Source: Lepidodermella squamata (lineage: Eukaryota > Animalia > Gastrotricha). Taken from it: a DNA stretch of 64,000 nt. A program made the position numbers and the translations under genes. Positions 1 to 26,252 of the stretch are shown here, in pieces. Each line of letters opens with the position of its first letter. Positions within the stretch are counted from its first letter, which is position 1. Location: assembly GCA_047495785.1 (NCBI GenBank), contig JBLDXI010000030.1, positions 806,001-870,000 on the forward strand, written 5' to 3'. Under the pieces are notes generated by a model that was not told where the DNA came from, searched no databases, and was given only the letters and a program-made list of their open reading frames with translations.

Positions 1-2169
1 CTGTCAGAGCCAACAAGATCGTGATCACGAACATGACTCGATCTGGCTTGCTGGCCTGCATGAGAAACGCAGCGAGTTCTAACAGTGTGAGGATCAGACA
101 AGGCCCAAGAATGTTCAGAAGATAGTAATTCGGTCGCCTTCGAAACGTCAGTGAGAACACGGCAACACTCACTCTGCTTCCAATCGTTGGAGCAGGCAGC
201 ATTTCAATTCTCGTTTCTTTTCTCTCGCCCAAAATTTGCCACTGGGCTATGGGTGAAAGATCATCGGGTATTACGAAAACCAAATCAGAGAAATTGGTTA
301 GCGCAGCAGAGCGATGGATTCCGAACTCAACCTCGCAGGTTTGAGTATCGAAAGGGAACTTTCGAAGATTCAGTGAACAGGTTGAGGTGTAGACGCCAAT
401 TCTTGACCAGTAGAACTGCATTTCCAAGTACGTTGCGTCCAGTGGTTTGATCACAAAGACAAAATCATCGCCTAGAATGGTGTCGACCATGTAAACGTTA
501 TCTGGGCTTGTGCGAAATGTTAAGGGCGGTAGCCAGAAATTCTCCTTGTCGCCAACGAAAACGCGTTCCGGATCTTGAATTTCGATAGGAATGTCACTTC
601 GTTTACAGGTCGTGACGCTCCATCGCAGCTGTAGGATGCCTGATAGAGTTATAGTCTCTTCGACCTCTTTTATACCGAAGAACTGGTCAATAACGAAAAT
701 CGCTCCGATTTTTGTAGGATTGCCATTGTTAGGCGGCGCGCTTCGATCAGCGGAGAAGTCTTTGCAGGTGCCATTCTTGATGTCAGAATCGCGGATTCTA
801 GGAGTCGCATTCTCCGGCGGGAGTTTCGGCAGCACTTCCGCCGCTCTTTCAGCGATCGTTAGCTTCTTGGCTGAAGTTGTAGATGTCGCTGGCAGGGTTG
901 TTACGGCTACAGGAATCGGTGACGTAGTCGAGCTCATTGGCTTCGTAGTTGTAGTCGGCATTTGGGTTGTTGAATTGGACCCTGGAGATAAGGCAATATC
1001 TAGTTTTCGAAATTTCTCATAGAAAGCTTACATATTCGAAGTTTCATGTAAAACCCTCCTGTTCTGCTGGATGAACTTCCGCGATTGAAATAAGAGACCA
1101 GCAGCTGTGAATCACTCGGCACAAGTTGCCAGTCCCCGCTGAAGCTGGTTATGTTTTCTTTTTCGTCTATAAAAACCTGCTTGGAGTTGACGAGGCCCTT
1201 CTGGTAGTTCCCATAGGTAATGAGTACCCCAGCACCGTCGGTGTTGAGACTCGTGAAGTTTAACAATGCGTACCTGGACAATTTATTAAAGATCAAAATC
1301 ATCTGCTGCGTCGAAACTCACTCTAGATATGTCATCGATGGAGCAATGATAAGCCACTCGCAGATATCAATGAGCCTCGAGTTTTTCGCAACAGGAATCA
1401 CTCCGATCGTTAGTTCCTGGAAGTCCCGATCCACTACCGTGAAAGTAGAACAGTCCGCTGTAATAGGAAGCATATCTGTCGATACGATCGCGTTGTTTTC
1501 AGGCGGTTCTATTTGTTCGAAGAAAATCGTAACAGACGAGAAGTGCCGTTGGTTTGTCGAATAGAGCGCGACCATTGCCGAAGAACTGTTCGTCGTCACT
1601 GTTAACGTATTGCCTGCAGTCAGTCTGTTTGGGTCAATTTCAAGCAGTTTCTTCGCCGGTCCTGATTGCCCAATGTCGAAAATCGCCAATCTAAGCCCGT
1701 CATATGGGCCTCCACTGGTATCGTTGACAACCGCGGTCATTTCGGAAAACCTAAACGTTTCTATTGTTCATAATTTGAAAATTTTGAATCTTTTTCAGCA
1801 ATGCCTAATCACGTTTGTGCCGTTAGCAATAATTCGCCACTGACGGTAGAGGTTGTACTCCTGGGTGTAGGTTGTAACAATGGTGCCGTTTTTGAAGTTT
1901 GTCATTTCAATTGTTGTTTTCACGTTGAGAGTCCAGTCGAAGTTGACATTTTTGTAGGCTGTTTTGGACTCGCAAGCTAGGCCGAAATAGCTTCCAGTGC
2001 ACGCGCAAACTTTATTGATCGTACACGAGCCTCCATTCTGGCAGCCATTCGGGCATGAATGTGCTAGAAAACGAAATTTAGTCTGAGATAGATAGTTCGG
2101 AAAGCTGATTATTCAACCTGTATTGATGATCTCAGAGGCAACAAGGATAAGATACCAAAATCGCAGCAT
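1..2169 (-). CDS. Chimeric Cys-loop channel A1, short form (signal peptide, EGF, 2 CUB-like, Thr/Ser stalk, pLGIC); 3' end runs off the window
   Basis: ATG at 2169 (MLRFWYLILVASEIINT). EGF exon CPNGCQNGGSCTINKVCACTGSYFGLAC, then CUB-like exons (ORFs 1318-1740 and 1000-1302). The final exon from ~999 is open to base 1 and is homologous to ORF 8995-10806 (DRSAPPNNG, FWLPPLTFRTSPD, RKFPFDTQTC, PDRVMFVITI). Confidence 0.85.
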
Positions 2170-2896
2170 GGAAAACACTTGAAAAAAATGAACAATTGTC
2201 GACCATGATGGCAAATAAGTCCCTTGGGTTTAGGATTATGACGCTAGCTGAGCAGGAAATTATCCTGCGAGGGCTCTATCGTTGCAGAGGAAATTGCAGC
2301 CGATCTCAACCGTTTGCCCTGCCGTTCCAAGTTTCATCATTTCCAAGCAGCGTTTTATTTGTCGAAACAGCATTTGATTTATTTTATAAAAATACATTTG
2401 TTTCGAATCAATACGAAGGATATAGAAAGATCGCGAATGACTCTAGGTTTCATTTCCGCAACAAACAGCCCTTCGAATTTCGAACTCTTTTTCAGTAGAA
2501 ATTGATATCAATTCACAAATGTGCAGTAATTCACAAATATCAAATCACAATTAATTGTTATTTGACGTTATCATCTGAAATCTATCCAATAGAAGATCAT
2601 GCGTTTTTCACGCCCCCAAAAACCTGTATCCGTCAACAACTACTTCGTATTCCTCTCGATATGGCTATTTCGAACTCGCTTGAGCGTCATTGCCATGTCC
2701 TTACGCAAAACGTGGCATGAGTTCACACTATATTGAGACGGAGACGACTTGGAATCGCCTCTAAAATACTCATGTTCATGTCCAGTCTTATGGCTTGTGT
2801 AGTGGGTTCGACACAAGTTCGCCGAGAATGCCCTATATATGCGCGGTTTGCAATCACTGAAATCATTTCTGCCCAGTAATACAGCTGACTGAATTC

Positions 2897-5504
2897 ATGT
2901 TTCGTCTGCTAAGTTTGATCTTTCTCGCAACAAATGTGTACACGTTACTGCATGGGATAGATTTGCTTCCAGTGAGCCGAACTACCGCTGGTCAGCAGAG
3001 CGTCGCTCTAAACGAACAAATGCCCGATTACGCAACTTCAGCCTCTTATGGCAAAGAGAACAAGACTTTGATCACAATTCTCGCAGGCGTTAGCTACGGC
3101 GGCGAAATGCCACTGGGCCCTCTTGCAACAAAAGCAATTGAATTCGCGTTAGATCGACTCAAATCGATGCCGAATTTCTTAGCAGACTACGAAATAGCTT
3201 TCCAGCTTTACGATGACAAGGTAAAACTGAAAGCCTTACATTTCAGAGCCCTCTCTATTTTTTACGGTTCTATATTACAGTGCCTCGACTATGTCAGCAT
3301 TTCAGAGCAGTTCTCGCGCTTTAGAGGTGAAAGACCCGGTATCAATCGCTTGCCGATTTTCATAAGCATGGGATGTGACTCAATCGGAATTCGAACCATC
3401 GCAGAATCGGCAAAGTACTTTGATCATCTAGCCTTGACAGTCGCCCTCACTTCACCTGAGCCTTACTACCAGCGCAATCGTTTCCCAAACTACTTCGCCT
3501 TTTTCCAGAGATTTGAAGGTGGTCACTTGGCTGCGGTTGAATTTATCGCAAAAATGGGCTGGCACAAGGTGGGGATAATCTCTGAGTCCTTCATCCTCTA
3601 CGACATGCTTCAAGCGTTGTTGCTTCCTCTTCTCGATCGGAAAAACATCACCGTGATCCATTTGAGCAAATCTTCTCATGTTGCCGTGTATGATGAGGAA
3701 ATGATCCGTGTTTTCGACGAATTGAAAGAGATCGATGCGAGGATTTTCATTATGGACTCAGATCGAGCCTCAGGGAAAGCTTGCTGGCTGCATCGATACG
3801 GAATGTATGGACCAAACTACGTACCGATGTTCTGGTATTGGTCCGACATCTTCCCAACAGGGTTTGTACCACCTGAACAGGAGCCGTGGTGCACTATGAG
3901 TATGATAGACGAAGTAGTCGCTAGCGCTGTGTTTTTCGGAGATTCAACCCTTGTTGACATCGATGGACCGGAACACGTGGACTCGACAGGACTCTCAGCA
4001 GCTAGATGGGATGAAGAAATGAGCAAGAAGATTTTGAACCCAGAAGAAAGCGTGTTTTGGAGGTACTACCGATATACCATCTACGAAGTTATTCTCTTCG
4101 CTGGATTACTTCTCAACAAAACTGAAACTGATCTCAGGCGCAGGAATCAGACCTTGTTAGACTGGATGTCTGCAAAACCTGAGAAGAGCTCTTTAGAATT
4201 GATCGATCTTCTCAGGGAAAATGTGTACTCAGTCAAATTAACCGGGATGAAGGGCACGTATTCGTTCGATGAATCTACAAAAATGAATTCTAAAGGATTC
4301 ATTCCACTGACCCTGAGTCAGGTAGATTTCTCTCGAGACGAGACGGGAAGTGTTATCTTGGGGAGCCCGAGAATAGTCGCCGTACACAAAGCATCAGATA
4401 ATGACGGGGAGATGAAACTCTTCACGGAACGCTTGATGTGGTTAACGCAAGACGGAAGGGCACCTTTAGATTCGAAAGTTTATATCAGGATGGAAGTTGC
4501 CATTCTGCCACTGCCGTTTTACGTGTTCATCATTTCGTTCACAATCTTCTACCTCATTGCATTACTCTACATAATCGTGCGAAGATTCGCCAAGTTCAGA
4601 TTTGAAAGAAAGCCATCTGAAATATCTCCCAAAGATCAAGCAATGCGCCCAAGAATTAGTTTGGTTGAAACGAATGTTGAGGTTTTGAGAGTTCTGGGCA
4701 GTTTGATGTTATTAGCGAGTTTGGCCATGATTCCTTGCCCAGGGAGACCGATTCAGAGATCGACATCCTGTATCGCGATGCCCTTGCTTTACGTAACTGG
4801 AATGCTGACGACTATATTCGCATTCCTACTGAAGGCAGAAGATGCTCTTCTAACTCCGAGGGAGAAAAAACTTAGATATCGAATTTACGGCTTCGTTTAT
4901 GCTCTCGTCCTTGGCCTCTCAATTTCTTGGCTAGTCTTCACTGAGCCTATTGCTCTGGCTGAAAAGAACTTTCAAGAGTTTACTCATGACAAAACTCGAT
5001 TTTATACACCGTTTCGCAACGAATGCGTTCTAAGTGGCGAATCCAGCATGGCATCAATCATCCTGTTTTCAATGATATGCTTGATCAAAGGAATCACGCT
5101 GGCTCGTTTGTGCGTGGCCTGCATCAAACTTAATGCCGTAAGCTTCAAAACGCCTTTTCACTGTATCATTTAATTTCAATATATACTTAGAAGCGATACC
5201 GCGCAAAAGGACGCCTCAAGGTCCTATCAATTAGTTTCTACTGCCTGCTCATGCTGGCGGTGACAGCTGTCTTGGCGAGTTTGATTCTGCCGGACCATAC
5301 GGCTGTTATTTCATCTGTTTTTGCATTGTTTGTTCTTGCTGGGTCTAATGCAATCATACTTGTAAGAAATGACTTTAACTATTCGATTTTCTCCAATATG
5401 TTTCCCTGTCTACTTTTCAGGAAATTCCGTATTGCAACAAAAATGGTTCTAAAACTGCAAGCAATACCACCAAGCGCGCAAGCCGTTTGTCTTCAAGACT
5501 CTGA
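2897..5504 (+). CDS. Orphan class C GPCR, GABA-B-like (Venus flytrap + 7TM, no Cys-rich domain)
   Basis: Signal peptide; VFT motifs (LADYEI..YDDKC, RNRFPNYF, MGWHKVGII, DARIFI, GMYGPNYV); 7 hydrophobic segments. Introns 3221-3280, 5138-5190 and 5362-5420. TGA at 5502-5504, AATAAA at 5532. Confidence 0.85.
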
Positions 5505-7966: not shown

Positions 7967-8046
7967 ATCGCAGCAATGCACAAATATCTAATATCATTAT
8001 AGTGCAAAGAGTATTATAAAGAGATATTATGTACGCATTTATCAGG

Positions 8047-8118
8047 GTAGATGTTAGTAAAGTAGGTTAATAGATGCATATCACGCGTTAGGTCCGCGGT
8101 TCGACTCCCCCATCTGCA
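8047..8118 (+). pseudogene. Degenerate tRNA-Asp-like sequence (pseudo-tRNA or SINE head)
   Basis: GTAGATG/CATCTGC acceptor stem, A-box-like TTAGTAAAGTAGG, GC-ATATCAC-GCG anticodon arm, B-box GGTTCGACTCC, TTTTT at 8124-8128. The D and T stems are defective. Confidence 0.6.
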
Positions 8119-8994: not shown

Positions 8995-11900
8995 TCATTC
9001 GTATTTAAGAATATATAAGGCGTACAGATTGATACCGAAGAAAACTGCCACTGCCATGACGAATCCAAGAGCATTCAGCAGATTCAAGACTGAAATACGA
9101 AGGCAGCCAAACTTCAGCACTTTTTTGGCCCATTTCGTCATATCGGTTGCCAGATACCCTAGTACCAGGTTGTAGAAACTGACCAGTCCTGTGTAAATCG
9201 CCATGTAGAAAATGTACTCGGTCAGCAGGATCATAGCAGCACTTTTCGGAACATCTTGCAAAACTTGATTCTGTGCTACTGTGAGAGCCAGCAAGATTGT
9301 GACTACGAACATGACTCGATCTGGCTTGTTAGCCTGCATGAGGGAAGCAGCCAGTTCCAAGAATGTGAGAACCAGACAAGGGCCGATGATGTTTAGCAGA
9401 TAGTAGTTGGGTCGTCTTCGAAAGGTTAGCGAGAAAACAGCCACACTAACTTTGCTTCCAATTGTCGGAGCGGCCAGCAATTTGACCTCGGATTTCTTTT
9501 CCTCACTCAGAATCTCCCACTCAGCTACTAGAGATAGATCATCGGGTGGGATGAGTGTCAGGTCAGAAAAAGCAGTAAGATTGACAGATCGATGAATGCC
9601 AAACTCGATTTCGCAGGTCTGAGTATGAAAGGGAAATTTTCGCAAATTCATCTCGCACGTTGACTTGTAGACGCCCACCCTCGACCAGTAGAACTGCATG
9701 TTCAGGTAGGTTTTATCAAGCGCCCTGATGACGAACACGAAATCGTCTCCGAGTTCACTGTCCACCATGTAGACATTGTCAGGGCTAGATCTGAAAGTGA
9801 GAGGAGGCAGCCAAAAGTCCTCCTTTTTGCCCACAAATACCCGTTCAGGCCCATCCAAGTCGAATGGCATTTCATCCCGCCGGCATGTCGTGACGTTCCA
9901 ACGAAGCTGGACGATTCCTGACAACGTTATTGTCTCATCCACCTCACTGATATCGAAAAATTGATCAACCACGAAAATTGCGCCGACTTTTGTTGCGTCG
10001 CCGTTGTTTGGCGGGGCACTCCGGTCAGCAGTGAAGTCCTTACATGGGCTCTTTGCAACGTCTGAATCTCGAATCCGTGGCGTAGCGGTTTCAATAGGTA
10101 GCGGAGGCATAGCTTCGGCGGCTTTTTCGGCAAAAGTCTTTTGCCTTGGAGATGCTGGGACAGGCGTAGTGGAGTATGTGGACTGCGTTTCTTGTATAGC
10201 TATTGTGTTTGCAGTGTACTGCGTTTCTTGAATAGGTTGTGTAGTCGGAATAGAGGAAAATTTCTTGCCAGAAGTGGACCCTGTGACTAGAGAAGGTGTA
10301 TCACTAGCTATGTTGCTTGTTGCACCACTGAAGTTGGGGATCGATGTAGTTGTGGAGTTCAATGAGATGGAAATCGACGTTGAAGTAGCGGGAAATGTCG
10401 ATGTAGTTGGTATTTTGAAAAAGAACTGCATTTCAAAGCCAGTTTTTGTTTGGTTAGAATCTGACATGCTTGAACTCATAATAACCATTATTTCAGAACC
10501 TTCAAATCCACTCAACGGCGGGATAGCTAGTTCAAGCTCATTTTCTACGGTAAAATTTGGTTTCGCCTCACGCAGCAGGTTGTTCCAGTTGTAGTTTGAA
10601 TCGCGACGCCTCATCTGTATGTTTCCATCAATAATCAGCGACATGTTGAGGATTCGATATGAAATGGATTGCGCGAGGGGAAACCGCAGCAGCCATTGGC
10701 AAACTTGGAAATCAACTCTCACCGGAGGCCATTTGCCAATCAAGACCGTATCAAATGGCCAGTCGATGACAGTCAAAGCCGGGCATGTTGTTTGGACCGG
10801 CATCAAATCAGGTGCAGCTCGCTTCTTCCGAGCAATAGAAATCGCTAAAATAAAGCTAATGAAAAAGGATTAAACCCGCCTTAGAATTACTTGTTGCATT
10901 TGTCGTAAACTCGACGTAAAGCCCCGTCTTGTATTGAAGCAACAGAATTACTGAATTTGTGGTGCTCTCAACTATGACCCAGAGACCGCCTGTTGTATTC
11001 GAAGGCCTGACAGCCGCAAGAGCTTTCGAGGTAGATGATCCGGGTGGCATTTCGTGAACAGTTAGCAGGACTATTAATTATTACAAAAAATAATAATTTT
11101 GATTTTTTAGGCTGTTATTTCACCATCGTTGCTGAAGTTTCCAAATTTATCTATCGCCTTGATTGAGAGTTTTACTAATCTGAAGAAGTAAATGTTCAAA
11201 ACTGCTCAAAAGTATAATAGCGTTACTTGAAAACGTTATCCGGGGTTGTGGTGAGCATCCATTGACAGAATCCAGATGTCGTGTCCACTTTAGCAAGGAC
11301 CAGCAACCAGTCACTAACATCGCTTCTGTTGTTCTGTCCAGCAAGCAACTCAGGTGTGCAGATTTGGACGCGCTTTTCGGCTGGGGCGCTTTTCTTCGCA
11401 TCGGATTCGCACTGCTGTCCATAGAAGCTCATAGGGCATTTGCAAGTGCTCTCGTAAATACATTCGCCACCGAGTGCGCACTTTTTGGGGCAAGCTTTAT
11501 CTAGACACGAGCAACTTTTGCCTATACGAAATTGATTATTGAAACGTAACTCATTTTGAATTTCATGTAAAACCCATGCGTCTGAGTTGCCAAGTATAGT
11601 TTGTTCCTGTACTGAAAGTATACCATAACTTCACGATTCGAGTCAGAATATGGCACAGGCAGGGTCTCTGCTGAGTTTTTCTGTGTTTCGTTTTTCCTCC
11701 AATCCACCCGAAACGGAGTTGAGTAGACTTCACCAGTTTGGTAATTGACCGAATCCATAGCAAGGTAAACCTCCGATTCACCAAATGTGTAATTTAAGAT
11801 TGTGTACCTGCCCGGTAAAATCAGTTGTAACGCAGTTCAATCATTGATCAATGTATTCCTCACTGCATAATACTGGTGGTAAAACTGCCTGGTGGTACAC

Positions 11901-13089
11901 TGACACGCCAAGCACACCACCGAGTGAATAGATAAGGTGCTGCCTTAGGTTTCACACCAATTGTAATTTCACCGAATTGCCAATTGATAGTTGTCAATGA
12001 AGGGCAACTTCCTTCTAATATTTCCGGCGTGGTTGTGGAGCCAAGCGTTGCTGGTATATTAGCTTCCACTTGCTCGAAGAAGATCTCGAGGCGGATGTAA
12101 AGTACATTTCCCGAACCAGTGAACAGCACTAATACAGAAGAACTATTACTCGTCACGGTCACAGTATTGTTGTTTCCAAGGTCAGATTGTCCGTATCGAC
12201 CGATAACAGGGGCTATGCCAGAATAACCGGCATCCAGCAACTCGATTCTAGCGACATCATTTAGTTGTTTGTTCCCAGAGATATCAAAAGTGAATAAAGA
12301 GATTTTCGAGAATTTGATCGCCTTTCCTTGTTCAGCAAAAATGCGCCATTGCAGCACGCAGTTCCAACACTCACCGGTGCTGACTAGGACTCCGCTTTTC
12401 ACGCCTCGGATCGTTGACTGTGGTGTCAAGGTAGCATTTGATACTTTTATCATGTTACTCTCGGTGTACTGACAAGTCGGGCCGAATGTATTTTCAGGGC
12501 ACAAGCATAACATCCCGTTGAGACATTTACCACTCCCACACGACTGTGGGCAGCTTAAACCCGTGGATTCTTTAGGAAAGAAATTGCTCAGACATAGAGG
12601 CCCCGAATCAGGAAAACTTACCATCTTCACAATAATCGCCACTATAGCGATAGCGGCATTTCGAACAAATACCAGTGGTCGTGCAGCTGCCTCCATTCGG
12701 ACAGGCCGCTTGAAAGAAGGTCTTTATCACATTGCTGCATTTGTTTTCATTCACTTACGGCCTTTTACGACGCATTTTGTTGGCGGGACGTCCCACGAGC
12801 CGTTCGCCAGGCATCGGTGGCTACTTAGAACATTAGAGCCGTCCATTACTTGAATGGTATCATTGAAATCGCGCGGCTTCGAGACTTCTTCTTGGGCGAT
12901 TTCTCTCCATTCGAAGGATGTTGCCGCGCTCTTGTAACGGTACTGACCGGGTAAAGTCCGAAACCCAGGGCACGTCGAGTGAGCTATAAAACAACCAGTA
13001 ATTTTCACGTAAATTGAGGAAAATCATTTCGTGCCTTCACAAATAAAATGTAAAAATGCCCATAGCTTTAGTGCTCTTCGGAATGACAT
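8995..13089 (-). CDS. Chimeric Cys-loop channel A2 (SP, sushi-like, EGFx2, CUBx2, EGF, CUB, RKKR, CUB, stalk, pLGIC, 4TM)
   Basis: ATG 13089 (MSFRRALKLWAFLHFIC). Phase-compatible exons cover ORFs 12751-13008, 11860-12696, 11522-11758, 11223-11432 and 10856-11050. Terminal exon 8995-10844 has CEMNLRKFPFHTQTC, FRRRPNYYLLNIIGP, PDRVMFVVTILLALTV and four TM segments. Confidence 0.85.
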
Positions 13090-15320: not shown

Positions 15321-18300
15321 TTATTCGTAGTTGAGAACATAAAGGCCATACAAATTGATTCCCAAAAAGAACGCCACTGCGAGAATGAAGCCGATTGCGT
15401 TCAAGAAATTCAGCAGAGTCACCTTGCAAAATAAGACAGAAATTGGCTTCTTGCCAGTCTTACGCATTTCCGTCGCTAGGTACCCGAGAAGCAGGTTGTA
15501 AAGCGTAACCAACCCAGTGTAGACCGACATGTAGAAGATGTACTCTGTCAGAAGGATCCTCTCAGCACTTTTCGGTACATCGGCCAAGACCTGATTCTGG
15601 GCAACAGTCAGAGCCAGTAGGATTGTGACCACAAACATGACCCGATCTGGCTTACTAGCATGCATTAGAAACGCAGCAAGTTCCAAGAAAGTTAGAATCA
15701 AACAAGGCCCGATTATGTTCAGCAGGTAGTAATTCGGCCGTCTGCGATAAGTTAGGGAGAAAACTGCAACACTGACTCTACTCCCAATTGTAGCAGCTGG
15801 CCATAGCTTGACTTCAGCCTTAGTTTGCCCCGGCAAGATCTGCCACAGAGCGATTGATGATAACGTATCTGGCGTGATAATCCGCAGATAATCCGCGGAA
15901 AACCCTGTCAGATTGACCGAGCGATGAATCCCGAACTCAATCTTACACGTTTGGGTATCGAACGGGAATTTCCTCAGATTCATCTCGCATGTCGATTTGT
16001 AGACACCCACCCTCGACCAGTAGAACTGCATGCTTAGGTAAGTATCATCAAGGGGCTTGATTATGAACACGAAGTCGTCCCCCAACTGGCTTTTGACCAT
16101 GTAGACATTATCAGGGCTCGATCTGAATGTCAAAGGGGGTAGCCAGAATTGCTCCTTCGAACCAACGAAAACCCTCTCCGCAGCGTTGATTTCGACAGGT
16201 ATTTCATTTCGTTTACAGGTTGTAATGTTCCATCGGAGTTGTAGTATCCCTGAGACTATTATCGTCTCTTCGACTTCCTTAATCCCGAAAAATTGGTCGA
16301 TAACGAAAATCGCGCCAATATCCGTTGGGTTATCGTTGTTAGGTGGAGCACTACGGTCTGCGCTATAGTCGTGGCATGTGCCGTTGGTGATATCTGTATC
16401 TCGCACTCTTGGGGTTGCCGTTTCAGTCGGAAGTTGGGGTAGAGCTTCGGCTGCCTTTTCTATAACAGTCATTTGCGTTTGAAGAGGAGTTGGAAAGGTT
16501 GGTATCTCTATTGTAGTTGGCGCGCTTGTTGCAGTAGTTACCCATAGTATTGTTGTTGGTAGAGAACTCGAACTACTCCAGCTCGATGTCGTACTGTCAC
16601 TCAAGCTTGAATTTGAATTTGAAATCGTAGATGCTGTTGTAGTCGAAGTCGTAGTAGTTGTTGTTGTCGTCGTCGGTAGTTCGAAATTGAGCTTCATTTG
16701 GAATCCTGATTTCGCATCAGCCAGGTCAGACTTCCCGGTGTTTAGAACGACCAAAAGTTCTGTATTCACAGTTCCATTCAACCAATCGAATCGCTGCATC
16801 CCCTCAGGTTTCGTTAGGCTGAAATCAGCCGAGAACGTTCGATTCGCAATGTTCCAGCTGTTGCTGTTGTCGCGGCGGCGAATTACAAGATTTCCGTCTC
16901 GCTTCAGATCAATGTTCATAAACTGGTAGGAAAAATCGAGAGCGAATGGGTAGCGTATCAGCCACTGGCAAACTGTTAGGTTCGTCCTGGAAGCAGGCCA
17001 TTTCCCAATCACGCCCGTCTCCATCGGCCAGTCTATAACTGCGAAGACCGGGCAGGTTCCGTCAACTGGTGGTAAGTCGGGAGCAGCTCGCTTTGCCTTA
17101 CTTTTAGTAACTGGAGCCTCTGGGAAAAATGGCGAAATAAAAAATATTAAACAATGGAAATGTTTATACCAGGGTTGAAATCTGCGCTAAATTGTATGTA
17201 TAACCCGGGCTGATATCGGAGGAGTAGAATCATCGTGCTAGCTGTGCCGTTCTTAAAAGTCAGACCCCTCGGGGTGGAAGGGGTTATCTCTACCAAAGGA
17301 GTAGCTAGGACAGATCCAGTTGCCAATTCGTGGATCGAGAAAATAACTTTAAGAAGGAACATCGTTAGAGTTAGCTTTGGAAAATCAGTTTCCTTACCGT
17401 CATCCCGAAAATACCCCATAGAATCGATGGCTTTTATGACAACGTTGTTGATCCTGGATAGGATTCATTATAATGAAAGGATTAAAAGATGAGTCCGGCT
17501 TACGTGAAAGTTTGATTAGCATAGGTTGAGATCATCCACTGGCAGAATCCTGACTTTGCCTGGAATTTGAGTAGAATCATACCCCTTCCATTGATATTTG
17601 TCAGATTATTCTGCCCAGCCACCAATGCCGAATTACATACGGTGTTTTTTATGGGATACATATCTTCAAAAAAGTGGTTGGTGTACATTTAAATAATAGC
17701 GGATCGTGGCATTACTGCTATTCGTATCAAAATTGAACTCGCACGAGACTCCATAGTAGTTAGCCGGGCATTGGCAAGTGTCCTTGTAAATGCAGAACCC
17801 ATCATTTTGACATGGCTTGGAGCATGAAGGGACTATACAAAAAACCTATCTCTAAATCAACAATAAATATCGTAAATATTCACCTAATTTGAATTTTGCG
17901 TAGAATCCATTGGTTCTAGGGATTGTATGACCTCTAGAAACGTAGTAAACCTGAACTTCACGGTTAGAATCAGAGTACGGCAAGGGCAGAAGCGTGTCGG
18001 AAAACGACTCAGACGCACGGGCACGTATATCAATCGAAAACGGGGTCGTGAAAATAGTTCCTGTTGTGTAGTTGATCGAATGCATTGCTAGGTATATCCC
18101 CGCGTCGCTGTTTACGGTGTAGTTAAGGAACCGGTATCTGTGGCATAATTTGTATTAAGGCGAATCGATGATTCATCAATATTACTGTAAAACGCTGTCA
18201 GGTGGAATGATGAAGCGCCAAGTGCATGTTTCTGAGATTGAACTGTAAATACTTGTTGCATTCACGCCAATAACCTCCTCTGTCGAGAATCGCCAGTCAA

Positions 18301-19395
18301 TTGTTGTCAGTGCGTTGCATTGAGGACCAATCTCAGGGAATGATTTGTCGCTATCAGCGCTCAAATAATTCGACCCATTGACCTGTTCAAAGTACATATC
18401 ATATCGAACGAAAAGGCCTGCCGCGGTTGAAGACAACCATAGTAGCACCGATGAGGTATTGCTCGTGACGGATTTTGCGTTTCCAGGAACCAGTTCACTA
18501 GATCGCAATTCAGCGAGTTTCGTTGCAACTCCGGAATTGCCAAAGTCGAACACTTGGAATTTCGCCTCGTTGTTGAGAGTTACATTGCCAGTAGAGTTGA
18601 CCACTGTCAGAAAAATTCCAGAGAGCTTTACAGCCTTGCCTGGATCCGCAAAAATCCGCCATTGGAACAGTCCATTGCCAAGTATGTAGTAACCGTCGAT
18701 TACTCCGTTTTGAACGTTTTGAATTGTCGTGTCGCGTGACAAAAGATACAATTGTTTCGTCATTTTATAGCCGACTTTGTGCTGACAGTAACGGCCGCGC
18801 ATATCAGCCGGACAGGCGCAGGCTTTGCCATTCAAACATGTGCCATTAGTGCAACCAAGTGAGCAGCTAGAAGCAGCTAAAATACAAGTAAAATAGTCAG
18901 AAAATGGCTTCAAAAAACATAAGTTACCATCTTCGCAATAAGTACCACTGTAACCATAATAACAATTGCATTGATCATTTCCATTACACCAACCACCGTT
19001 TGCGCAACCAGCTTAACAGTTGAACATTCAAAATTCAAATATTCGCTTGTAAAGGGCTTGTAAAGCTTACAGCCTGAAGCGCATGGAGCCGGAGCTACGT
19101 CCCAAGTGTTATCGCTCAAGCACCGGTGCTCCCTTTTCGGCGCCCAATTGACCAATATTCGAATTGTGTCGTTGATTTTGTTGAACTTGGCTACGTCACC
19201 TTGCGAGATATTTTGCCATATGTAAGACGTAGCATTTGGGGAGCCGGTCATGTACTGAAACTGCACCCCTAATGTCCTGAAATATGGACAAGTTGCCCAG
19301 ACTGAAACAAGTAACGATTAATAGGTGATTTATTCAGTGAAATTTTCACCTTCAGAACTTTGCTGCAGGAAAATGAGGAGAGTCAAAGCTAACAT
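15321..19395 (-). CDS. Chimeric Cys-loop channel A3 (same architecture as A2)
   Basis: ATG 19395 (MLALTLLIFLQQSSE). Exons within ORFs 18910-19266, 18182-18913, 17852-18085, 17500-17688 and 17147-17419. The terminal exon has KAKR, CUB, poly-Thr stalk, CEMNLRKFPFDTQTC and 4TM. Confidence 0.85.
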
Positions 19396-21596: not shown

Positions 21597-24500
21597 TTAT
21601 TCCCGGTCCAAAACGTGTAAAGCATACAGATTGATAGCCGCGAAAATAGCAGATGCGCCGACAAATCCGATGTAGTTCAGAAAATTCATTAGAGAAACGC
21701 GGAAACAGCAGATTTTCAAGGTTTTGAAAGCCCTCTTCGGACTTTCGGTTGCGATGAAACCCATCATGAGGTTGTAGAGAGTGCAGATGCCAGTGTAAGC
21801 TGCCATGTAGAAAATCCACTCAGTCAACAGAATTCTCTCAGCTGTTCGAGGCATAATGACTAAAACTTGGTTCTGCGCAACAGTGAGAGCCAGCAGGATA
21901 GTTACAACAAACATAACTCGATCAGGCTTACTAGCTTGCATTAGAAAAGCAGCAAGTTCCAAGAAAGTTAGAATCAAACACGGACCGACAATGTTAAGAA
22001 TATAGTAGTCTGGCCGCCTTCTGAACGTGAGAGAAAACACAGCAAGGCTAACCTTTGCACTCAGAGTCGGCGCCTTAACAGTCGAGACACTAAACTCATT
22101 CTGTTCATAAAGAATTTCCCAAAGAGAAACAGGTGATGTTTCATCAAGCGTAAACATCGTGATATTGTCGAATATAGCCAACGTGATTGATCGATGGATT
22201 CCGAACTTGAGGACACAAGTCTGGGTATCAAACGGGAATTTTCTGAGACTCAACGAGCATCTTGACGTGAAAACACCAACTCGCGACCAGTAGAACTGCA
22301 TAGTTATGTTAGGATCGCCGGGTTTGACGACGAAAATGAAATCATCCCCCAAATGGCTGTCAATCATATATATATCATCCGGGCTGGTTCTGAAGGTGAG
22401 AGGCGGCCGCCAGAACTCGTTGACGTCTCCGACAAAAACTCGCTCAGGCCCGCCAATGTCGATGTTAACTTGATCCTTCGAGCATGTCGTGACGTTCCAG
22501 CGGAGTTGTAGGATCCCGGCTAGGGTTACAGTTTCAGCTACATCGTCGATTCCGAGGAATTGATCGATAACCAACGTTGCGTTGACTCCATTAGGCTGGT
22601 TGTTGTTTGGCGGGGCACTTTTGTCCGAGGCGTAGTCTTTGCATTCGCTGTTTTTCAGATCAGAGTCGCGAACTTTTGGAATAGCGCTTTCGACTGGCAG
22701 TTTCGGGAAAGAAGCTGCAGCTTTGTCCTCGGCTGATTGTTTAACATTTGGTGCTGGGGGTGGTTCGGTTGTAGTCGTAGTCGTAGTTGCAGTGGTTGTA
22801 GTGCTCGATGTTGCTGTTGTAATCGCCTGGGTGGTTGAAGGAATTCCCGTTGAGGAGGATTCCATAATGGCCGCAGTTGTTTTCACTTCTGCTAGAGTAG
22901 GACTAGTTGCAAGGCTTGAAGAAGCACTTTGAGTTGTAGATTGTGCAGAAGTAGGAATAGCTTTCGATGTCGTACCGGATGTCGTGACAGTGGTTGAAAT
23001 TGTGGTTGAAATAGTGGTCAAAGTGGATGTAGCCTTAGTAGACGTTGTAGCCGTGCTGGAGGAGGAGGTTGTCGGAGTGGTTGTAGATGACGCAGGGGGA
23101 ATTTGAATAAGACTCACTCTAGCAATAGCTGGCACCTGGTTCATTGTATAGTAAACAAGCAATGCCTCATTGTTACTGCCAACCGCAGAGCTTGGTAGAA
23201 ATTGCCAATATCCCATGCTTCCCATGATGTTATTCAGCGATCCAGGAGAGCCATAAAAGAAAAGTATGGAGCCAGCGGAGAATAGGTAATCATTCGACTG
23301 GTCAAGAACAAATCTCATCCTCCAATCAGCGGGGTAGACAAAATGCCACATGCAGAGCTCTCTATTCTGAGTAGGTTTCTGAACGGCGGGCCATTTTCCA
23401 GCGTACTGGTTCGTCGAGAATGTCCAATCGATTCTCGAATAAACCGAACAATTAGAACTAGCACTTGGGAATACTTTATCATTGACCTGGCGCTTCTTCC
23501 GTATTAAACTCGAAGATGCTGGCACTGAATTATCAAAAGAAATACTTTGAAGGTTTCATTCCACTCAGGTTGTCTTACCGAAACCTTAGCACTCTCATCA
23601 GTTGCTATACCTTTCCCCGATTACGGATCTCAACGGATCTCGGTTTTAGCTAAAACTTAATAACGAAAATGGAATTTTTGGCAATAAAAATGTTAGCCAT
23701 CCTGAAATGTTCGGGTTTTGAAATTGCGTTTAGGCGCTACACATTCTTAGGCTTCAAGCTGGAATTTTCTTTATGAACCTTGTTCAGACGATTCATCAGG
23801 AACTTACCGCTTTCGAATTCCATGAACAACTCAGTATAAGAGTACTGCATTTCCAGCACGACTATCGCCGTGTTTGATTTTGTGACGATTTCATCGCCAT
23901 TTCCTGGCATGCCACTTTTCGCGTTGAATCGTGCGATTTCCACCGAGGAAACTGCTCCTATGGGCAATTCATGAATTGTGAGATTCGCGACTGGCCCGGC
24001 GGTTTCCCACTCAATGCTCCTGTTGACTGATTTCAGGGTAATATTCCAAAATCTTGTATTGAAACAATTCTTAAGATGGAAATTTGGATAAAGCTGGATG
24101 CGTTACCTGATATAATTGTCTTGCGCTGCCGTTATATACATCACGCATGTTTGGGCTGTTCTTTGCTGCCACAACATTGCCACCCCGCGTTTGAAGTTTT
24201 TTATAGTGTTGCTGCTGTCCATGCCCAAGAAGCAGGCTTTGATTTGCGGACTCGACGCTGGTACTACCATAATATTGTTCCTCATGATTATATATGCTTG
24301 CAACAAAACATCGGAGCTTACTGTACACCGCCGTGTTAACTTGGCAAAACGATCCAATCCAAGGCGATATGCACATGCAGGTATCTTTATAGACGCAAGT
24401 TCCACCATTCAGACAAGGGCTTGAACATGCCATTTCTATCACAAGAAAACGGATAATTTTTTTTATTGTATTACATTGAGTCAAAACCTGTTGATAGACG

Positions 24501-26252
24501 AAGAATGAACCCTCCAAACTTGTCGGCTGCCGGTAGAGCCCGGTATACGACGTGCATATCGGTGAAACCCTGAATGACGTCCGGTCGGATGAATGTTTGC
24601 GCGTTACCACTGCAACTGGAGTAGGTCGTGGGAGCAGTGAATCCCGAATTTTGCAAATAAATTCTGACATCGCTAGCGGAAAAGTTGCATTTCAGCATTG
24701 AATAGCGAAATATGCGATCTGTTGGAATTCGAACACGCCAAACGCAAATGTCGTAGTAGAAGCTCGTGGGCATAGGTGGCCACATGCCGATGTCAAGATT
24801 TCCCTCGAACTTCCAGTCGATCACCGTGTAGACATCGCATGTGGAACTTATTGGGGCCAAAGTGTTTGGGTAAGTTGCAGCTGGTCCTTTGGCTGTTTCC
24901 TCGACAAAAATGGAGTAATGCAAAAAGAACTGGGCTGAAGTGCTCCTGACAACGACGTAGACTGAAGAGGTCTTGGACGTAACCACAATGCCATTGACTG
25001 GATTCAGTGCAGATTGAGAAAATAGGCCGAGTTGTTCTGCAACACCAGAGTGTCCGATGTCGTAAAATCCAATCGAAACTGAAAAAGTTGAGGATTAAAG
25101 GTTAAATTTGAATAAATTATAGAAAAACGTCATTTATTATGTATTTTTATTTATTTATTTATTTATTTAGAAGCTATTACACCCAAAGAGGGAAGCTTGA
25201 CAAAGTATAAGGAAAACAACATATAATTGCAGGACAGGATCACATTTAGGACAGGAAAAGTGTTGTAGAAGAAAGGTTTTTCAACTGTTATCAACGAAAA
25301 AGTGGCCATCTTCTCTTACTATTGTTTATTTGTTGGTTCTTGCCGTCGTACGTGATCATGTGCATATACGAAAACCTGGATCGATGAATTCAGTGCGATG
25401 CAAAAATATACTCTATAGTTGACTCACTTCAAGGCATTTCCTGATACGGAGTTGATGCGGTATGTTGCTAGGAAAGACCCATTTGCAGTAACTTCAGGTC
25501 GTATGACTGAAGTAAACCCTTTCACCTCGTCGCCGTACCCATTCGTGTCATAATTTGTTATCCCCCATCTAGCATCTAAAATAAAAATTTTGAGTTTTAA
25601 ATATTCATAATCGTGATTTCAAACTTGGCGTTGAGTATTGACACTTGTCCCCATGTACTCCTGTGCCCGTGTCGCAAACGCAATAATTTGTACGAGAACA
25701 AGTTCCAATGCATCCAGGGCATGATTTAGCTAGGAGTAAAAATATATCAATCAAATGTTTTGAATAAATGCAAAGACCGTGTAACAAACCATCGCAATAT
25801 TGACCAGAATAACCGTATCCGCATTCGCACTTGTGAGTGGTTGTGTTACATACAGCCGAGTACGTTTGGCAATTGCCTATAGGGGGAAAGTAGCAGTCAG
25901 CAGTCAAGTCCGAAATGTTTCACGCACCTGCAAAGCAATCCCACGGTTCGACAGACCAAGTGCCATTCTCCAAACATTTGTGTTCTACTTCCCATTTCGA
26001 AGCGGATGAATATACCCTAACTGACACGTTAGTAGCTGTCATCGCATTCGCATTGTTCAGCAGAGGACCCCAAGTTCCGTTAGTACTGGACGAGTATGCG
26101 TGGGCATTCAGCGTTTTTATCGGTGTACAAGCGGACTCAGCTTGGGTAAACAAAGTTTCAATGGGAAATATCATGGAAAATATATAAAAATCTTTACCTA
26201 ATGTTAACAAAACCGAACCAACTACCACTTGGGCTAAGTTGAAATTCCGCAT
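21597..26252 (-). CDS. Chimeric Cys-loop channel A4 (same architecture, longest stalk)
   Basis: ATG 26252 (MRNFNLAQVVVGSVLLTL). Sushi-like HKCLENGTWSVEPWDC, EGF exons 25605-25907, CUB 24471-24986, EGF CSSPCLNGGTCVYKDTCMC. Terminal ORF 21597-23525 has RKKR, a stalk of roughly 110 aa, CSLSLRKFPFDTQTC and 4TM. Confidence 0.82.

What the first reader, a model, noticed from the sequence alone, without database searches (positions are those of the whole stretch)
1..26252. Family of chimeric Cys-loop channels carrying sushi/EGF/CUB ectodomains on a mucin stalk
Seen: four tandem minus-strand genes whose terminal exon encodes a complete pLGIC (C-x13-C loop, M1-M4) with no signal peptide of its own. 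In A2-A4 a CUB-like domain, a Thr/Ser stalk and the channel lie in one uninterrupted ORF, so the fusion does not depend on splice prediction. Upstream exons add a signal peptide, a sushi-like domain, EGF and further CUB-like domains with compatible phases. Known: animal Cys-loop subunits normally begin directly with the ligand-binding domain. CUB (LEV-10) and sushi (LEV-9) proteins act in trans to cluster nematode AChRs, and prokaryotic pLGICs such as DeCLIC carry extra N-terminal modules. Inference: a pentamer displaying five stalked protein-binding arms could be gated or localised by contact, macromolecular ligands or tethering, acting as an adhesion/pattern-recognition or mechano/chemotactile channel. 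I know of no described family with this architecture but cannot search for one.
Basis: partly seen in the sequence, partly recalled or inferred. Interest (0 to 1): 0.95.

Follow-up and report, generated by a model that had tools for sequence, protein, structure and literature searches.

The report
Ion channels with built-in CUB/EGF arms
Four neighbouring genes of an unidentified small-intron animal each encode a nicotinic-receptor-type ion channel subunit with a long outer arm of CUB and EGF modules on a sugar-rich stalk, a design textbooks give only to bacteria, although the lobster genome paper reported a related form.

Summary
Four minus-strand paralogues (A1 2-2169, cut by the window edge; A2 8998-13089; A3 15324-19395; A4 21600-26252) give intact spliced reading frames of 1204-1232 aa.

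The module order is signal peptide, small N-module, EGF, EGF, CUB, CUB, EGF, CUB, a conserved dibasic site, CUB, a Thr/Ser/Pro stalk, then a complete Cys-loop channel with almost no M3-M4 loop. A1 has a shorter arm.

- **Folds:** two CUB-like module types fold as CUB (Z 10.3 and 13.4; all top 50 matches are CUB). The 'sushi' label is not confirmed.
- **Gene models:** introns are about 50 nt, GT-AG, mostly phase 1. Variants in a second DNA data set are 22 synonymous to 8 non-synonymous, and both indels lie in my introns.
- **Transcripts:** evidence is weak, from one run only guessed to be RNA.
- **Relatives:** unnamed metagenome proteins carry signal peptide, head, stalk and channel in one ORF.

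The 2021 lobster genome paper reports Cys-loop receptors with lectin, pentraxin and LDLa domains, but I found none with CUB/EGF arms.

This scan also found related headed channels many times elsewhere in this genome.

Function is untested. My best reading is an in-cis extracellular anchor or capture arm on a conventionally gated cation channel. I class it as a new variant of a known kind.

The parts
2..2169 (-). Gene A1 (partial, cut by the window start inside M2): signal peptide, EGF, CUB1-type, CUB2-type, stalk (872-1032), ligand-binding domain, M1 and part of M2. Exons 2169-2118, 2063-1805, 1750-1322, 1273-1032, 981-2.
   Evidence: Hand-built model gives 654 codons without a stop; intron 2 needs a GC-AG donor.
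8998..13089 (-). Gene A2, 1227 aa, 9 exons, introns 46-57 nt. Terminal exon 8998-10844 holds CUB4, stalk and channel.
15324..19395 (-). Gene A3, 1204 aa, 10 exons, introns 48-59 nt. Terminal exon 15324-17119 holds CUB4, stalk and channel.
   Evidence: DNA variants of run X2 fit this exon model.
21600..26252 (-). Gene A4, 1232 aa, 11 exons (introns 49-60 nt plus two of 241 and 283 nt). Terminal exon 21600-23524.
19351..19395 (-). A3 signal-peptide-like first exon (15 codons plus one base, phase 1 donor). Equivalents: A2 13041-13089, A4 26198-26252, A1 2118-2169.
   Evidence: Met followed by a hydrophobic run and a GT donor. No signal-peptide predictor was available.
19084..19350 (-). A3 N-terminal module ('sushi-like', 73 aa, two Cys and a C-x4-(G/N)-x-W motif). 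Equivalents: A2 12775-12981, A4 25938-26138. Absent from A1.
   Evidence: No Pfam hit, no PDB profile hit. Atlas feature score 0.90 to Sushi/Sushi_2 clusters. Alignment.
18776..19083 (-). A3 EGF1 (18929-19083, spans an intron) and EGF2 (18776-18871).
   Evidence: Six-Cys EGF spacing. C-x-C-x5-G-x2-C motif found. Pfam EGF/EGF_2 E 0.002-0.016, below the cut-off. Notch EGF is the best PDB profile hit, E 0.026.
18380..18751 (-). A3 CUB1-type domain. Equivalents: A2 12067-12435, A4 24897-25567, A1 1510-1950.
   Evidence: AlphaFold model with pLDDT about 80 over the domain. All top 50 matches are CUB domains; the best is spermadhesin 1spp_B, Z 13.4, rmsd 2.3 A over 110 residues. Pfam CUB E 0.04-0.07 in A2 only.
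17885..18328 (-). A3 CUB2-type domain, split by a phase-2 intron. Equivalents: A2 11552-12012, A4 24489-24845 (no intron), A1 1033-1458.
   Evidence: Aligns with CUB4: shared C...IDW...G.WP...C.W motif. It was a row in the alignment used for the fold model.
17735..17884 (-). A3 EGF3. Equivalents: A2 11403-11551, A4 24338-24488.
   Evidence: Pfam EGF/EGF_2 E 0.002-0.004 in A4. The EGF of metagenome relative P0011 matches it.
17171..17643 (-). A3 CUB3 (CUB1-type, split by introns). Equivalents: A2 10892-11366, A4 23809-24240.
   Evidence: Assigned by sequence likeness to CUB1 (C/Q-W-x-I motif) and by paralogue alignment. Not folded on its own.
17088..17105 (-). Conserved dibasic (proprotein-convertase-like) site between CUB3 and CUB4: KAKR in A3, RKKR in A2 (10819-10833) and RKKR in A4 (23490-23504).
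   Evidence: It is the only [RK]-x-[KR]-R motif in each protein and sits in the same column. Cleavage was not tested.
16674..17060 (-). A3 CUB4. Equivalents: A2 10408-10791, A4 23094-23456.
   Evidence: AlphaFold model pLDDT 72.6, pTM 0.72. All top 50 matches are CUB; the best is Kremen CUB, Z 10.3, rmsd 2.6 A over 106 residues. The best Atlas cluster is 'CUB domain-containing protein', TM 0.63.
16473..16673 (-). A3 Thr/Ser/Pro-rich stalk (67 aa). Equivalents: A2 10147-10407 (87 aa), A4 22749-23093 (115 aa), A1 872-1032 (37 aa).
   Evidence: Stretches of 35-135 residues with at least 60% S/T/P. Tandem repeat rows at 16621-16669 and 22989-23018.
15738..16472 (-). A3 pre-LBD motif (C-x-D-Y/F-x5-APPNN) and ligand-binding domain with the Cys-loop. 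Equivalents: A2 9412-10146, A4 22014-22748, A1 134-871.
   Evidence: Pfam PF02931. PDB nAChR hits. The motif is invariant across the wider family.
15324..15737 (-). A3 M1-M4 with an M3-M4 loop of about 15-20 residues. Equivalents: A2 8998-9411, A4 21600-22013.
   Evidence: PF02932 E 9e-5 to 7e-4, below the cut-off. Hydropathy. Alignment to Torpedo delta through M1-M3, with -1' Asp and 9' Leu.

Best explanation
**Shown from sequence.** Each gene makes one secreted-pathway polypeptide. It has an N-terminal signal peptide and a 360-850 residue extracellular arm of EGF and CUB modules, led in A2-A4 by a small N-module. A Thr/Ser/Pro stalk of 37-115 residues follows, then a complete nicotinic-branch Cys-loop subunit with essentially no intracellular M3-M4 domain.

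**Family property, inferred.** Five subunits form a channel that displays five arms.

**Inferred from conserved residues.** The pore is still opened through the ligand-binding domain and probably conducts cations. The Cys-loop FPFD, pre-M1 Arg, M1 Pro, 9' Leu and -1' Asp are all kept.

**Inferred mechanism.** The arm most likely acts as a built-in extracellular anchor or capture device. It would bind matrix, cell-surface or soluble macromolecular partners, and so position, cluster or locally feed the channel. That would replace the cytoplasmic scaffold sites this family lacks. It would do in cis what CUB and sushi proteins (LEV-10, LEV-9, Neto, SOL-1) do in trans for other ionotropic receptors.

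**Inferred processing.** A conserved dibasic site before the last CUB domain probably lets a proprotein convertase split the arm into a distal ~600-residue piece and a CUB-stalk-channel piece.

**Inferred evolution.** Fast divergence of the arms over a conserved channel suggests that the paralogues differ in what they bind, not in how they conduct.
For: **Architecture.**
- Uninterrupted CUB-stalk-channel frames.
- Stop-free spliced models with uniform ~50-nt GT-AG introns, mostly phase 1.
- The gap between the CUB3 exon and the channel exon is only 46-50 nt in A2 and A3, which leaves no room for a separate promoter.

**Domain identity.**
- PF02931 at E 1e-11 to 1e-12.
- nAChR delta at E 3e-19, with -1' Asp and 9' Leu aligned.
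- CUB folds with Z 10.3 and 13.4, all top 50 matches CUB, Neto2 among them.

**Selection.**
- The paralogues are old (synonymous sites saturated), yet all frames are intact and arm pN (0.35-0.59) is below pS (0.68-0.96).
- Against a second DNA data set, A3 shows 22 synonymous to 8 non-synonymous changes (13 to 6 within arm codons 420-682).
- Ten changes, and both indels, lie in my introns or flanks.

**Arms versus channel.** Arms are 18-47% identical, against 53-74% for the channel.

**Independent support for the design.** Unnamed metagenome relatives (28-36% identity in the channel) have signal peptide, head (Laminin_G_3 E 6e-16, or EGF), T/S stalk and channel in a single ORF.

**Dibasic site.** It is the only such motif in each protein and sits in the same column.

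**Short M3-M4 loop.**
Against: - No functional datum exists for any part.
- Transcript evidence is weak. Run X1 is only guessed to be RNA. Its tiny contigs cover 15391-17364 only. They include a pair on either side of the last intron, but none covers the distal arm.
- The orthosteric pocket is not nicotinic. By my own reading of the sequence (not a tool result), His stands where loop B Trp is and there is no loop C Cys pair. It is therefore unknown whether any small ligand gates the channel.
- If the dibasic site is cut and the distal piece leaves, anchoring would rest on one CUB domain alone.
- The signal peptides are short and were not scored with a predictor.
- The CUB calcium-site residues were not examined.
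Confidence: 0.5

Rival explanations
1. The arm is the sensor, which is the first reader's idea and the lobster paper's idea. Binding of a macromolecule, a microbial pattern or another cell's surface would open the pore directly. So would tension transmitted through the stalk to the N-terminus of the ligand-binding domain. This would make an ionotropic pattern-recognition, chemotactile or tether-gated channel.
For: - The arm is attached directly ahead of the conserved pre-LBD segment, at the top of the ligand-binding domain.
- The nicotinic pocket residues are not kept (my own reading of the A3 sequence, not a tool result).
- The arms diverge fast, as recognition modules do.
- By earlier scan notes, the same genome holds channels with lectin-fold, SRCR and LamG heads.
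- The lobster paper proposes this link.
Against: - A 37-115 residue, probably O-glycosylated and flexible stalk separates arm and channel, so rigid allosteric coupling of the DeCLIC kind is unlikely.
- The dibasic site would detach most of the arm.
- The ligand-binding domain is under strong constraint (53-71% identity), as expected if it still binds something itself.
- No experiment exists.
Confidence: 0.2
2. Polyprotein reading. Convertase cleavage at the conserved dibasic site releases the distal N-module-EGF-EGF-CUB-CUB-EGF-CUB piece as a soluble or matrix-bound protein. That piece would be an auxiliary or clustering factor made in fixed proportion with its channel. The mature channel would keep only one CUB domain on the stalk.
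For: - A single, positionally conserved RKKR/KAKR motif lies in the linker before CUB4 in A2-A4.
- The cysteine count on either side is even, so no inter-fragment disulfide is implied (and the models).
- A1 lacks both the site and the modules between CUB2 and the stalk.
Against: - Cleavage is untested.
- A3 has Lys rather than Arg at P4.
- Many cleaved receptors keep their fragments attached non-covalently.
- Metagenome relatives with other heads show no obvious equivalent site; I did not check this systematically.
Confidence: 0.15
3. Gene-model artefact. The arm exons and the channel exon belong to separate transcripts (a secreted CUB/EGF protein gene followed by a channel gene), or the loci are decaying pseudogenes.
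For: - No full-length transcript was seen.
- X1 covers only the 3' half of A3.
- An A-type pseudogene remnant does exist at about 14540-14950.
- A1 needs a non-canonical GC donor.
Against: - CUB4, stalk and channel share one ORF in three genes.
- The terminal exon has no start codon ahead of CUB4 and no signal peptide.
- The CUB3 exon ends in a donor without a stop codon, 46-50 nt upstream.
- All 8-10 junctions per gene keep the frame.
- Synonymous changes exceed non-synonymous ones 22 to 8, and the indels avoid exons.
- Relatives carry head, stalk and channel in one ORF.
Confidence: 0.05
4. The proteins no longer conduct. The pentameric scaffold would serve only as a membrane anchor that presents five adhesion arms, making an adhesion or matrix receptor.
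For: - The nicotinic ligand-pocket residues are not kept (my own reading of the A3 sequence).
- The intracellular domain is missing.
- The arm is large and adhesive in type.
Against: - The pore-lining M2 is the most conserved part: an invariant run from Lys-Pro-Asp-Arg through the 9' Leu in all full copies.
- The gating elements are kept: FPFD, pre-M1 Arg, M2-M3 Pro.
- TMD identity is 66-74%, against 18-47% in the arms.
Confidence: 0.05

Closest known systems
Lobster 'chimeric' Cys-loop receptors with immune-type domains (Polinski et al. 2021, Sci Adv, PMC8221624)
   Same: Both are animal Cys-loop subunits (PF02931/PF02932) predicted to carry extra extracellular protein- or glycan-binding modules in the same polypeptide. 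Both families are expanded and lack a known ligand. The paper makes the same proposal of coupling recognition to ion flux.
   Different: The lobster heads are C-type lectin, pentraxin and LDLa. Here they are EGF and CUB, plus an unclassified N-module, a long mucin-like stalk and a dibasic site. The lobster paper calls the design unique to lobster and related crustaceans, whereas the present animal is unidentified. In my search its channel is nearest to unnamed metagenome proteins, with no crustacean among the 21 hits I looked up. Orthology was not tested.
Prokaryotic pLGICs with N-terminal domains, e.g. DeCLIC
   Same: Both have extra extracellular or periplasmic domains N-terminal to the ligand-binding domain, and a minimal or absent M3-M4 intracellular domain.
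   Different: By my recollection, DeCLIC's N-terminal domain is two jelly-roll lobes packed on the extracellular domain that modulate gating. Here a chain of up to eight cysteine-rich animal modules is held away on a flexible stalk. The channel has a true Cys-loop and sits in the nicotinic branch. The structural literature states that such N-terminal domains belong to prokaryotic members.
CUB and sushi auxiliary proteins of ionotropic receptors: LEV-10 and LEV-9 (C. elegans L-AChR clustering), Neto1/2 (kainate receptors), SOL-1 (GLR-1)
   Same: In both cases CUB and related modules sit next to an ionotropic receptor's ectodomain and control clustering or gating. The Neto2 CUB domains are among the structural matches of both models.
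   Different: Those are separate single-pass or secreted proteins acting in trans. Here the modules are part of the channel subunit itself. What LEV-10, LEV-9 and SOL-1 do is taken from established literature, not tested here.
Unnamed metagenome pLGICs with heads (P0008, P0011, P0015, P0019, P0020, P0037) and headed channels noted elsewhere in this genome by this scan
   Same: They share the channel clade, the pre-LBD C-x-D-F-x5-APPNN motif, a signal peptide, a globular head and a T/S-rich stalk before the channel.
   Different: Their heads are Laminin_G_3-like, EGF or unclassified. None matches the CUB modules by sequence. None is described in a paper that I found.

Membership tests
Pentameric ligand-gated (Cys-loop) ion channel | Extracellular ligand-binding beta-sandwich domain (PF02931) | tested here: met
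   E 1.6e-12, 2.9e-12 and 5.3e-11; 43-48 bits against a cut-off of 26. PDB nAChR hits down to E 3e-19.
Pentameric ligand-gated (Cys-loop) ion channel | C-x13-C loop with the FPFD motif | tested here: met
   One such loop per gene. It is aligned to the Torpedo delta Cys-loop.
Pentameric ligand-gated (Cys-loop) ion channel | Four transmembrane helices M1-M4 with a pore-lining M2 (PF02932) | tested here: met
   PF02932 scores 20-23 bits, below the 28.1 cut-off. However, M1-M3 align residue by residue with nAChR delta, including 9' Leu, and hydropathy shows the helices, M4 included.
Pentameric ligand-gated (Cys-loop) ion channel | Long M3-M4 intracellular domain, typical of animal members | tested here: not met
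   Only about 15-20 residues lie between M3 and M4. This is as in prokaryotic members and in the ~390-aa relatives.
Pentameric ligand-gated (Cys-loop) ion channel | Pentameric assembly and ligand-gated conduction | not testable with these tools
   Needs expression and recording.
CUB domain | CUB beta-sandwich fold | tested here: met
   CUB4-type: Z 10.3, rmsd 2.6 A over 106 residues. CUB1-type: Z 13.4, rmsd 2.3 A over 110 residues. All top 50 matches are CUB in both. The models are of moderate confidence, pLDDT 73 and about 80.
CUB domain | Sequence match to Pfam PF00431 at the gathering score | tested here: not met
   The best is 13.9-14.7 bits against a cut-off of 21.4, in A2 CUB1 only. CUB2 and CUB4 give none. 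TSG-6 and PCPE-1 CUB appear at E 0.2-0.8 in a profile search.
CUB domain | Two conserved disulfides and, in ligand-binding CUBs, a Ca2+ site | tested here: inconclusive
   CUB2 and CUB4 keep the first Cys pair and the C-x-W motif. The CUB1 type lacks most cysteines. The Ca2+ ligands were not examined.
EGF-like domain | Six-cysteine pattern with C-x-C-x5-G-x2-C | tested here: met
   The motif is found in the EGF modules. Pfam EGF/EGF_2 E 0.002-0.016, below the cut-off. Notch EGF at E 0.026.
Sushi / CCP domain | Four cysteines (1-3, 2-4) and a conserved Trp; Pfam PF00084 | tested here: not met
   The module has only two cysteines of its own plus the Trp. There is no Pfam hit at E up to 10 and no PDB profile hit. 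Only an Atlas feature score of 0.90 points to Sushi. I do not file it as sushi.
Lobster-type chimeric Cys-loop receptors | PF02931/PF02932 plus extra extracellular binding domains in one predicted protein | tested here: met
   compared with the text of PMC8221624.
Lobster-type chimeric Cys-loop receptors | Heads of C-type lectin, pentraxin or LDLa type; crustacean lineage | tested here: not met
   The heads are CUB/EGF. None of those Pfam families was hit. The host animal is unidentified: the best named hit of a neighbouring aldolase exon is a scorpion protein at 46%.
Proprotein-convertase substrate | R-x-K/R-R motif in an exposed linker | tested here: met
   RKKR in A2 and A4, and KAKR in A3 (Lys at P4). 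It lies between CUB3 and CUB4 and is the only such motif per protein. Cleavage itself is not testable here.
Mucin-like stalk | Long stretch rich in Ser/Thr/Pro; O-glycosylation | tested here: met
   Stretches of 35-135 residues with at least 60% S/T/P. Glycosylation is not testable here.

The most novel reading that the evidence does not exclude
This animal, and unnamed relatives seen only in metagenomes, has turned the pentameric channel into a modular surface receptor. A conserved stalk-plus-channel cassette receives interchangeable recognition heads by exon shuffling. The heads here are CUB/EGF; elsewhere in the genome they are lectin-fold, LamG and SRCR. Binding of a macromolecule, or contact or pull on the head, would open the pore directly. 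That would make a fast ionotropic route for pattern recognition, chemotactile sensing or adhesion sensing, with no counterpart among characterised animal receptors.
Probability: 0.15. Interest if true: 0.9.

Novelty: new variant of a known kind. Interest (0 to 1): 0.6.

Why it matters
Structural reviews of this channel family state that extra N-terminal domains belong to bacterial members and that animal subunits start with the ligand-binding domain. The lobster genome paper broke that rule on the basis of gene predictions and expression, and called the design crustacean-specific.

These genes add four things:
- The same principle occurs with different heads (CUB/EGF).
- A long mucin-like stalk and a likely convertase site are part of the design.
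- The channel has lost its intracellular domain.
- Signs of purifying selection extend to the arm.

If the arms anchor or feed the channel, this is a natural experiment: auxiliary-subunit functions (LEV-10, LEV-9, Neto) are fused to the pore-forming subunit. If they gate it, this would be a new sensory principle.

Either way the genes are compact and have a stripped-down channel. That makes them practical for expression, recording with and without the arm, and cryo-EM.

Tried and rejected
- **Word-indexed protein search with the A4 channel part.** It found only two distant hits: a sea anemone nAChR-like protein at 25% and one metagenome protein. It was uninformative because of the word filter.
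- **Exact look-up of the A3 ORF product in public assemblies.** Not on record.
- **Identifying the host animal.**
  - The aldolase-like exon at 27824-28429 gave a best named hit from a scorpion at 46%.
  - Rfam found nothing in the window.
  - The run names are coded.
  - The host remains unresolved.
- **Looking for the CUB modules in the N-terminal extensions of the 150 best channel relatives.** Only the EGF of P0011 matched.
- **Long named hits from bivalves, a hemichordate, an acoel and fish.** These are two or three channel subunits merged in one gene model, not armed channels.
- **Two scans of JGI metagenome contigs.** The first found nothing. The second found only 21-30% identical fragments on short contigs.
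- **dN/dS between paralogues.** Synonymous sites are saturated, so only the comparison of pN and pS could be used.
- **Sushi assignment.** Pfam and a PDB profile search were both blank.
- **The plain channel genes at 46-54 kb as the source of the A-type channel.** Rejected, because they form a far clade.
- **Literature searches for CUB/EGF/sushi plus pLGIC.** Nothing was found.

Full report
**What is there**

The first 26 kb of the window hold four minus-strand paralogues. Stop-to-stop open frames of 624, 621 and 652 codons end at 8998, 15324 and 21600. A fourth frame runs off the window start.

- Pfam finds the neurotransmitter-gated channel ligand-binding domain in all three complete frames: E 1.6e-12, 2.9e-12 and 5.3e-11, at 43-48 bits against a cut-off of 26.
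- The transmembrane family scores just below its cut-off.
- Against solved structures the channel part is nearest to nicotinic receptor subunits: Torpedo delta at E 3e-19 and alpha-7 at about 1e-17.
- Each copy has one C-x13-C loop with FPF(D/H), and hydrophobic stretches that fit M1-M4. Only about 15-20 residues separate M3 and M4.
- In the residue-by-residue alignment to Torpedo delta, the pore helix keeps Asp at -1', Arg at 0' and Leu at 9'. This is the pattern of cation-selective members.

**Gene models**

I built the models by hand from three-frame displays and assembled them in a script.

| Gene | Window span | Length | Introns |
|---|---|---|---|
| A1 | 2169-2 (cut inside M2) | at least 654 aa | 4 |
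| A2 | 13089-8998 | 1227 aa | 8 |
| A3 | 19395-15324 | 1204 aa | 9 |
| A4 | 26252-21600 | 1232 aa | 10 |

- None of the spliced frames contains a stop.
- Twenty-eight of the 31 introns are 46-60 nt long. Thirty are GT-AG; A1 intron 2 needs GC-AG.
- Phases are mostly 1 at module borders, as expected for shuffled extracellular modules.
- Keeping the frame by chance across 8-10 junctions in three old paralogues is not credible.
- The exon before the terminal exon ends in a donor without a stop. It lies only 46-50 nt upstream in A2 and A3.
- The terminal exon has no start codon before its CUB domain and no signal peptide.

**Module order in A2-A4**

1. Signal-peptide-like start
2. A 67-73 residue N-module
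3. EGF
4. EGF
5. CUB1
6. CUB2
7. EGF
8. CUB3
9. Dibasic site
10. CUB4
11. Thr/Ser/Pro stalk (67-115 residues)
12. A conserved pre-LBD segment
13. Ligand-binding domain
14. M1-M4

A1 has signal peptide, EGF, CUB1, CUB2, a 37-residue stalk and the channel. In a channel-domain tree A1 groups with A2 and A3 (support 98), with A4 outside (support 100). Its short arm is therefore a secondary loss.

Sequence profiles are weak. Pfam CUB reaches only E 0.04-0.07, in one module of A2. EGF families reach E 0.002-0.016. Sushi gets nothing.

I folded two contiguous pieces with small paralogue alignments.

| Model | Confidence | Best match | Other matches |
|---|---|---|---|
| CUB4/CUB2 type | pLDDT 72.6, pTM 0.72 | Kremen CUB, Z 10.3, rmsd 2.6 A over 106 residues | C1r, neuropilin, enteropeptidase, cubilin, TSG-6, MASP, PCPE-1, Neto2 |
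| CUB1 type | pLDDT about 80 over the domain; its EGF below 50 | Spermadhesin, Z 13.4, rmsd 2.3 A over 110 of 112 residues | All top 50 are CUB |

- For the CUB4/CUB2 type, all top 50 matches are also CUB domains.
- The nearest ESM Atlas cluster to it is also a CUB family. The CUB fold is therefore supported.
- The EGF modules show the six-cysteine spacing and the C-x-C-x5-G-x2-C motif. Notch EGF is their best PDB profile hit.
- The 'sushi-like' module is not confirmed. The last cysteine of its exon is really Cys1 of EGF1, which leaves two cysteines and a C-x4-(G/N)-x-W motif.
- A PDB profile search of that module is blank. Only a language-model feature search points to Sushi/Sushi_2, at 0.90, which is borderline.

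**Are the genes alive, and is the arm part of them?**

- The paralogues are old: pS is 0.66-0.96, which is saturated.
- The arms keep 18-47% identity with pN 0.35-0.59, below pS. The ligand-binding domain keeps 53-71% and the membrane domain 66-74%.
- A 2024 DNA run (X2) holds this locus with many differences. Of the 40 best-supported ones listed, 22 are synonymous and 8 non-synonymous in my A3 exons. Within arm codons 420-682 the split is 13 to 6.
- Ten further differences lie in my introns or flanks, seven of them in one 51-nt intron. Both listed indels fall inside introns. This supports both the exon model and purifying selection on the arm.
- Transcript evidence is weak. The only candidate RNA run (X1) is a guess. 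Its tiny contigs lie on 15391-17364 only. One read pair sits on either side of the last intron (17043-17093 and 17191-17241), and nothing covers the distal arm.

**Relatives**

An exhaustive HMMER search of 1.8 billion representatives found 3706 relatives. The best reach only 36% identity, and all the close ones are unnamed proteins from ENA metagenome assemblies.

- None aligns with the CUB4 domain.
- Several have long N-terminal extensions in a single ORF, with a signal peptide, a head and a T/S-rich stretch directly before the channel.
  - Laminin_G_3 scores E 6e-16 in P0037, and more weakly in P0015 and P0019.
  - P0011 has an EGF.
  - The maximum S/T/P content in 50 residues is 0.76 in P0008 and 0.86 in P0015.
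- The contig that carries P0011 holds eukaryotic housekeeping genes and CUB-trypsin genes.
- These headed proteins share a clade with A1-A4 in the tree.
- They also share an invariant pre-LBD motif, C-x-D-F/Y-x5-APPNN.
- Long named hits from bivalves, a hemichordate, an acoel and fish are merged tandem subunits, not armed channels.
- Earlier notes of this scan report channels with lectin-fold, LamG, SRCR and EGF/CUB heads at many other places in this genome, one of them 400 kb beyond this window. I could not read those loci. I use them only as context.

**How it most likely works**

*Shown.* One polypeptide with an extracellular arm, a stalk and a channel. The gating and pore residues are conserved. 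There is no intracellular domain. The arms diverge fast while the channel is conserved. One dibasic motif per protein (RKKR, KAKR, RKKR) sits at the same place before CUB4.

*Inferred.*
- Pentamers display five arms.
- The pore is cation-selective and is still opened through the ligand-binding domain.
- The arm anchors, clusters or feeds the channel by binding macromolecular partners. It would replace the missing cytoplasmic scaffold sites.
- It would do in cis what CUB and sushi proteins do in trans for other ionotropic receptors (established literature on LEV-10, LEV-9, Neto and SOL-1).
- A convertase may split the arm.

I give this combined reading about 0.5. The architecture alone I put at about 0.9.

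*Rivals.*

| Reading | Probability |
|---|---|
| The arm gates the pore directly, by a macromolecule, contact or pull | 0.2 |
| The distal arm is released as a co-made soluble factor | 0.15 |
| Gene-model artefact or pseudogenes | 0.05 |
| Non-conducting adhesion scaffold | 0.05 |

The long flexible stalk argues against rigid coupling of the DeCLIC kind. The non-nicotinic pocket, with His in place of the loop B Trp and no loop C cysteine pair (my own reading of the sequence), leaves the ligand open.

**Comparison with what is known**

- Recent structural papers say that animal members have an intracellular domain, while prokaryotic members can have an extra N-terminal domain.
- A broad phylogenetic survey does not mention N-terminal additions.
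- The lobster genome paper reports 66 Cys-loop receptors with C-type lectin, pentraxin and LDLa domains. It calls this the first demonstration and unique to lobster and related crustaceans.
- My searches found no paper with CUB, EGF or sushi modules, a mucin stalk or a convertase site on such a channel.

I therefore rate this a new variant of a known kind, not a categorically new one.

**Limits**

- The host species is unknown.
- No full-length transcript was seen.
- The signal peptides were judged by eye.
- Spliced proteins could not be handed to the fold or search tools, so CUB2 (apart from the A4 copy used as an alignment row), CUB3, the N-module and the whole protein were not modelled.
- Nothing about function has been tested.

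Noticed in passing
window 43175-54008 (+) and 55743-63084 (-): There are at least ten further channel genes or gene pieces of a different, plain kind. They are single-exon, about 390 aa, with their own signal peptide, a Cys-loop (FSFKKFPFD type) and a very short M3-M4 loop. Pfam PF02931 scores E 7e-7 for 46650-47816. They form a far clade from A1-A4.
   Followed up: partly
window 14540-14950 (-): Remnant of an A-type gene. The end of a CUB3-like module (like 10891-11070 of A2) directly abuts an M4-like tail that nearly matches A2's. Everything between is deleted.
   Followed up: no
window 6360-8281: A 178-bp satellite (6501-7966, 8.2 copies, 98% alike) is flanked on both sides by arrays of an 11-mer, ACTACGACGAA (6360-6429, 8214-8281). 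It lies between A1's neighbour gene and A2.
   Followed up: no
window 2897-5173 (+), 33996-36338 (-), 39880-42210 (-), perhaps 29337-30962 (-): Single-exon class C GPCR-like genes. ANF_receptor scores E 2e-12 to 4e-12, and 7tm_3 scores E 6e-6 in one. The two at 34-42 kb are close paralogues. The region is a receptor gene hotspot.
   Followed up: partly
window 54142-55746 (+): A 534-aa ORF with a Trypsin_2-type serine peptidase domain (E 7e-16) and weak echoes of flavivirus NS3 and S46 peptidases. It has no signal peptide and sits among the channel genes. Its origin is unclear: bacterial-type, viral-type or host.
   Followed up: no
window 19863-20966 (+): A two-ORF plus-strand gene (157 and 195 aa) between A3 and A4, with no Pfam hit at E 0.001. 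From memory its first part resembles PI-PLC X-domain proteins. This was not tested.
   Followed up: partly
window 15250-19450 versus run X2: The DNA run that holds this locus differs from the window at about 154 places in 4.2 kb and shows contig depths near 45 and near 80-90. This points to a second haplotype or strain with high divergence.
   Followed up: partly
A1-A4 pre-LBD segment (e.g. window 16340-16472 in A3), and P0003-P0019: A motif C-x-D-F/Y-x5-APPNN just ahead of the ligand-binding domain is invariant in A1-A4 and in distant metagenome relatives. It marks this channel clade and may pair its Cys with the invariant Cys in the first strands of the domain.
   Followed up: partly
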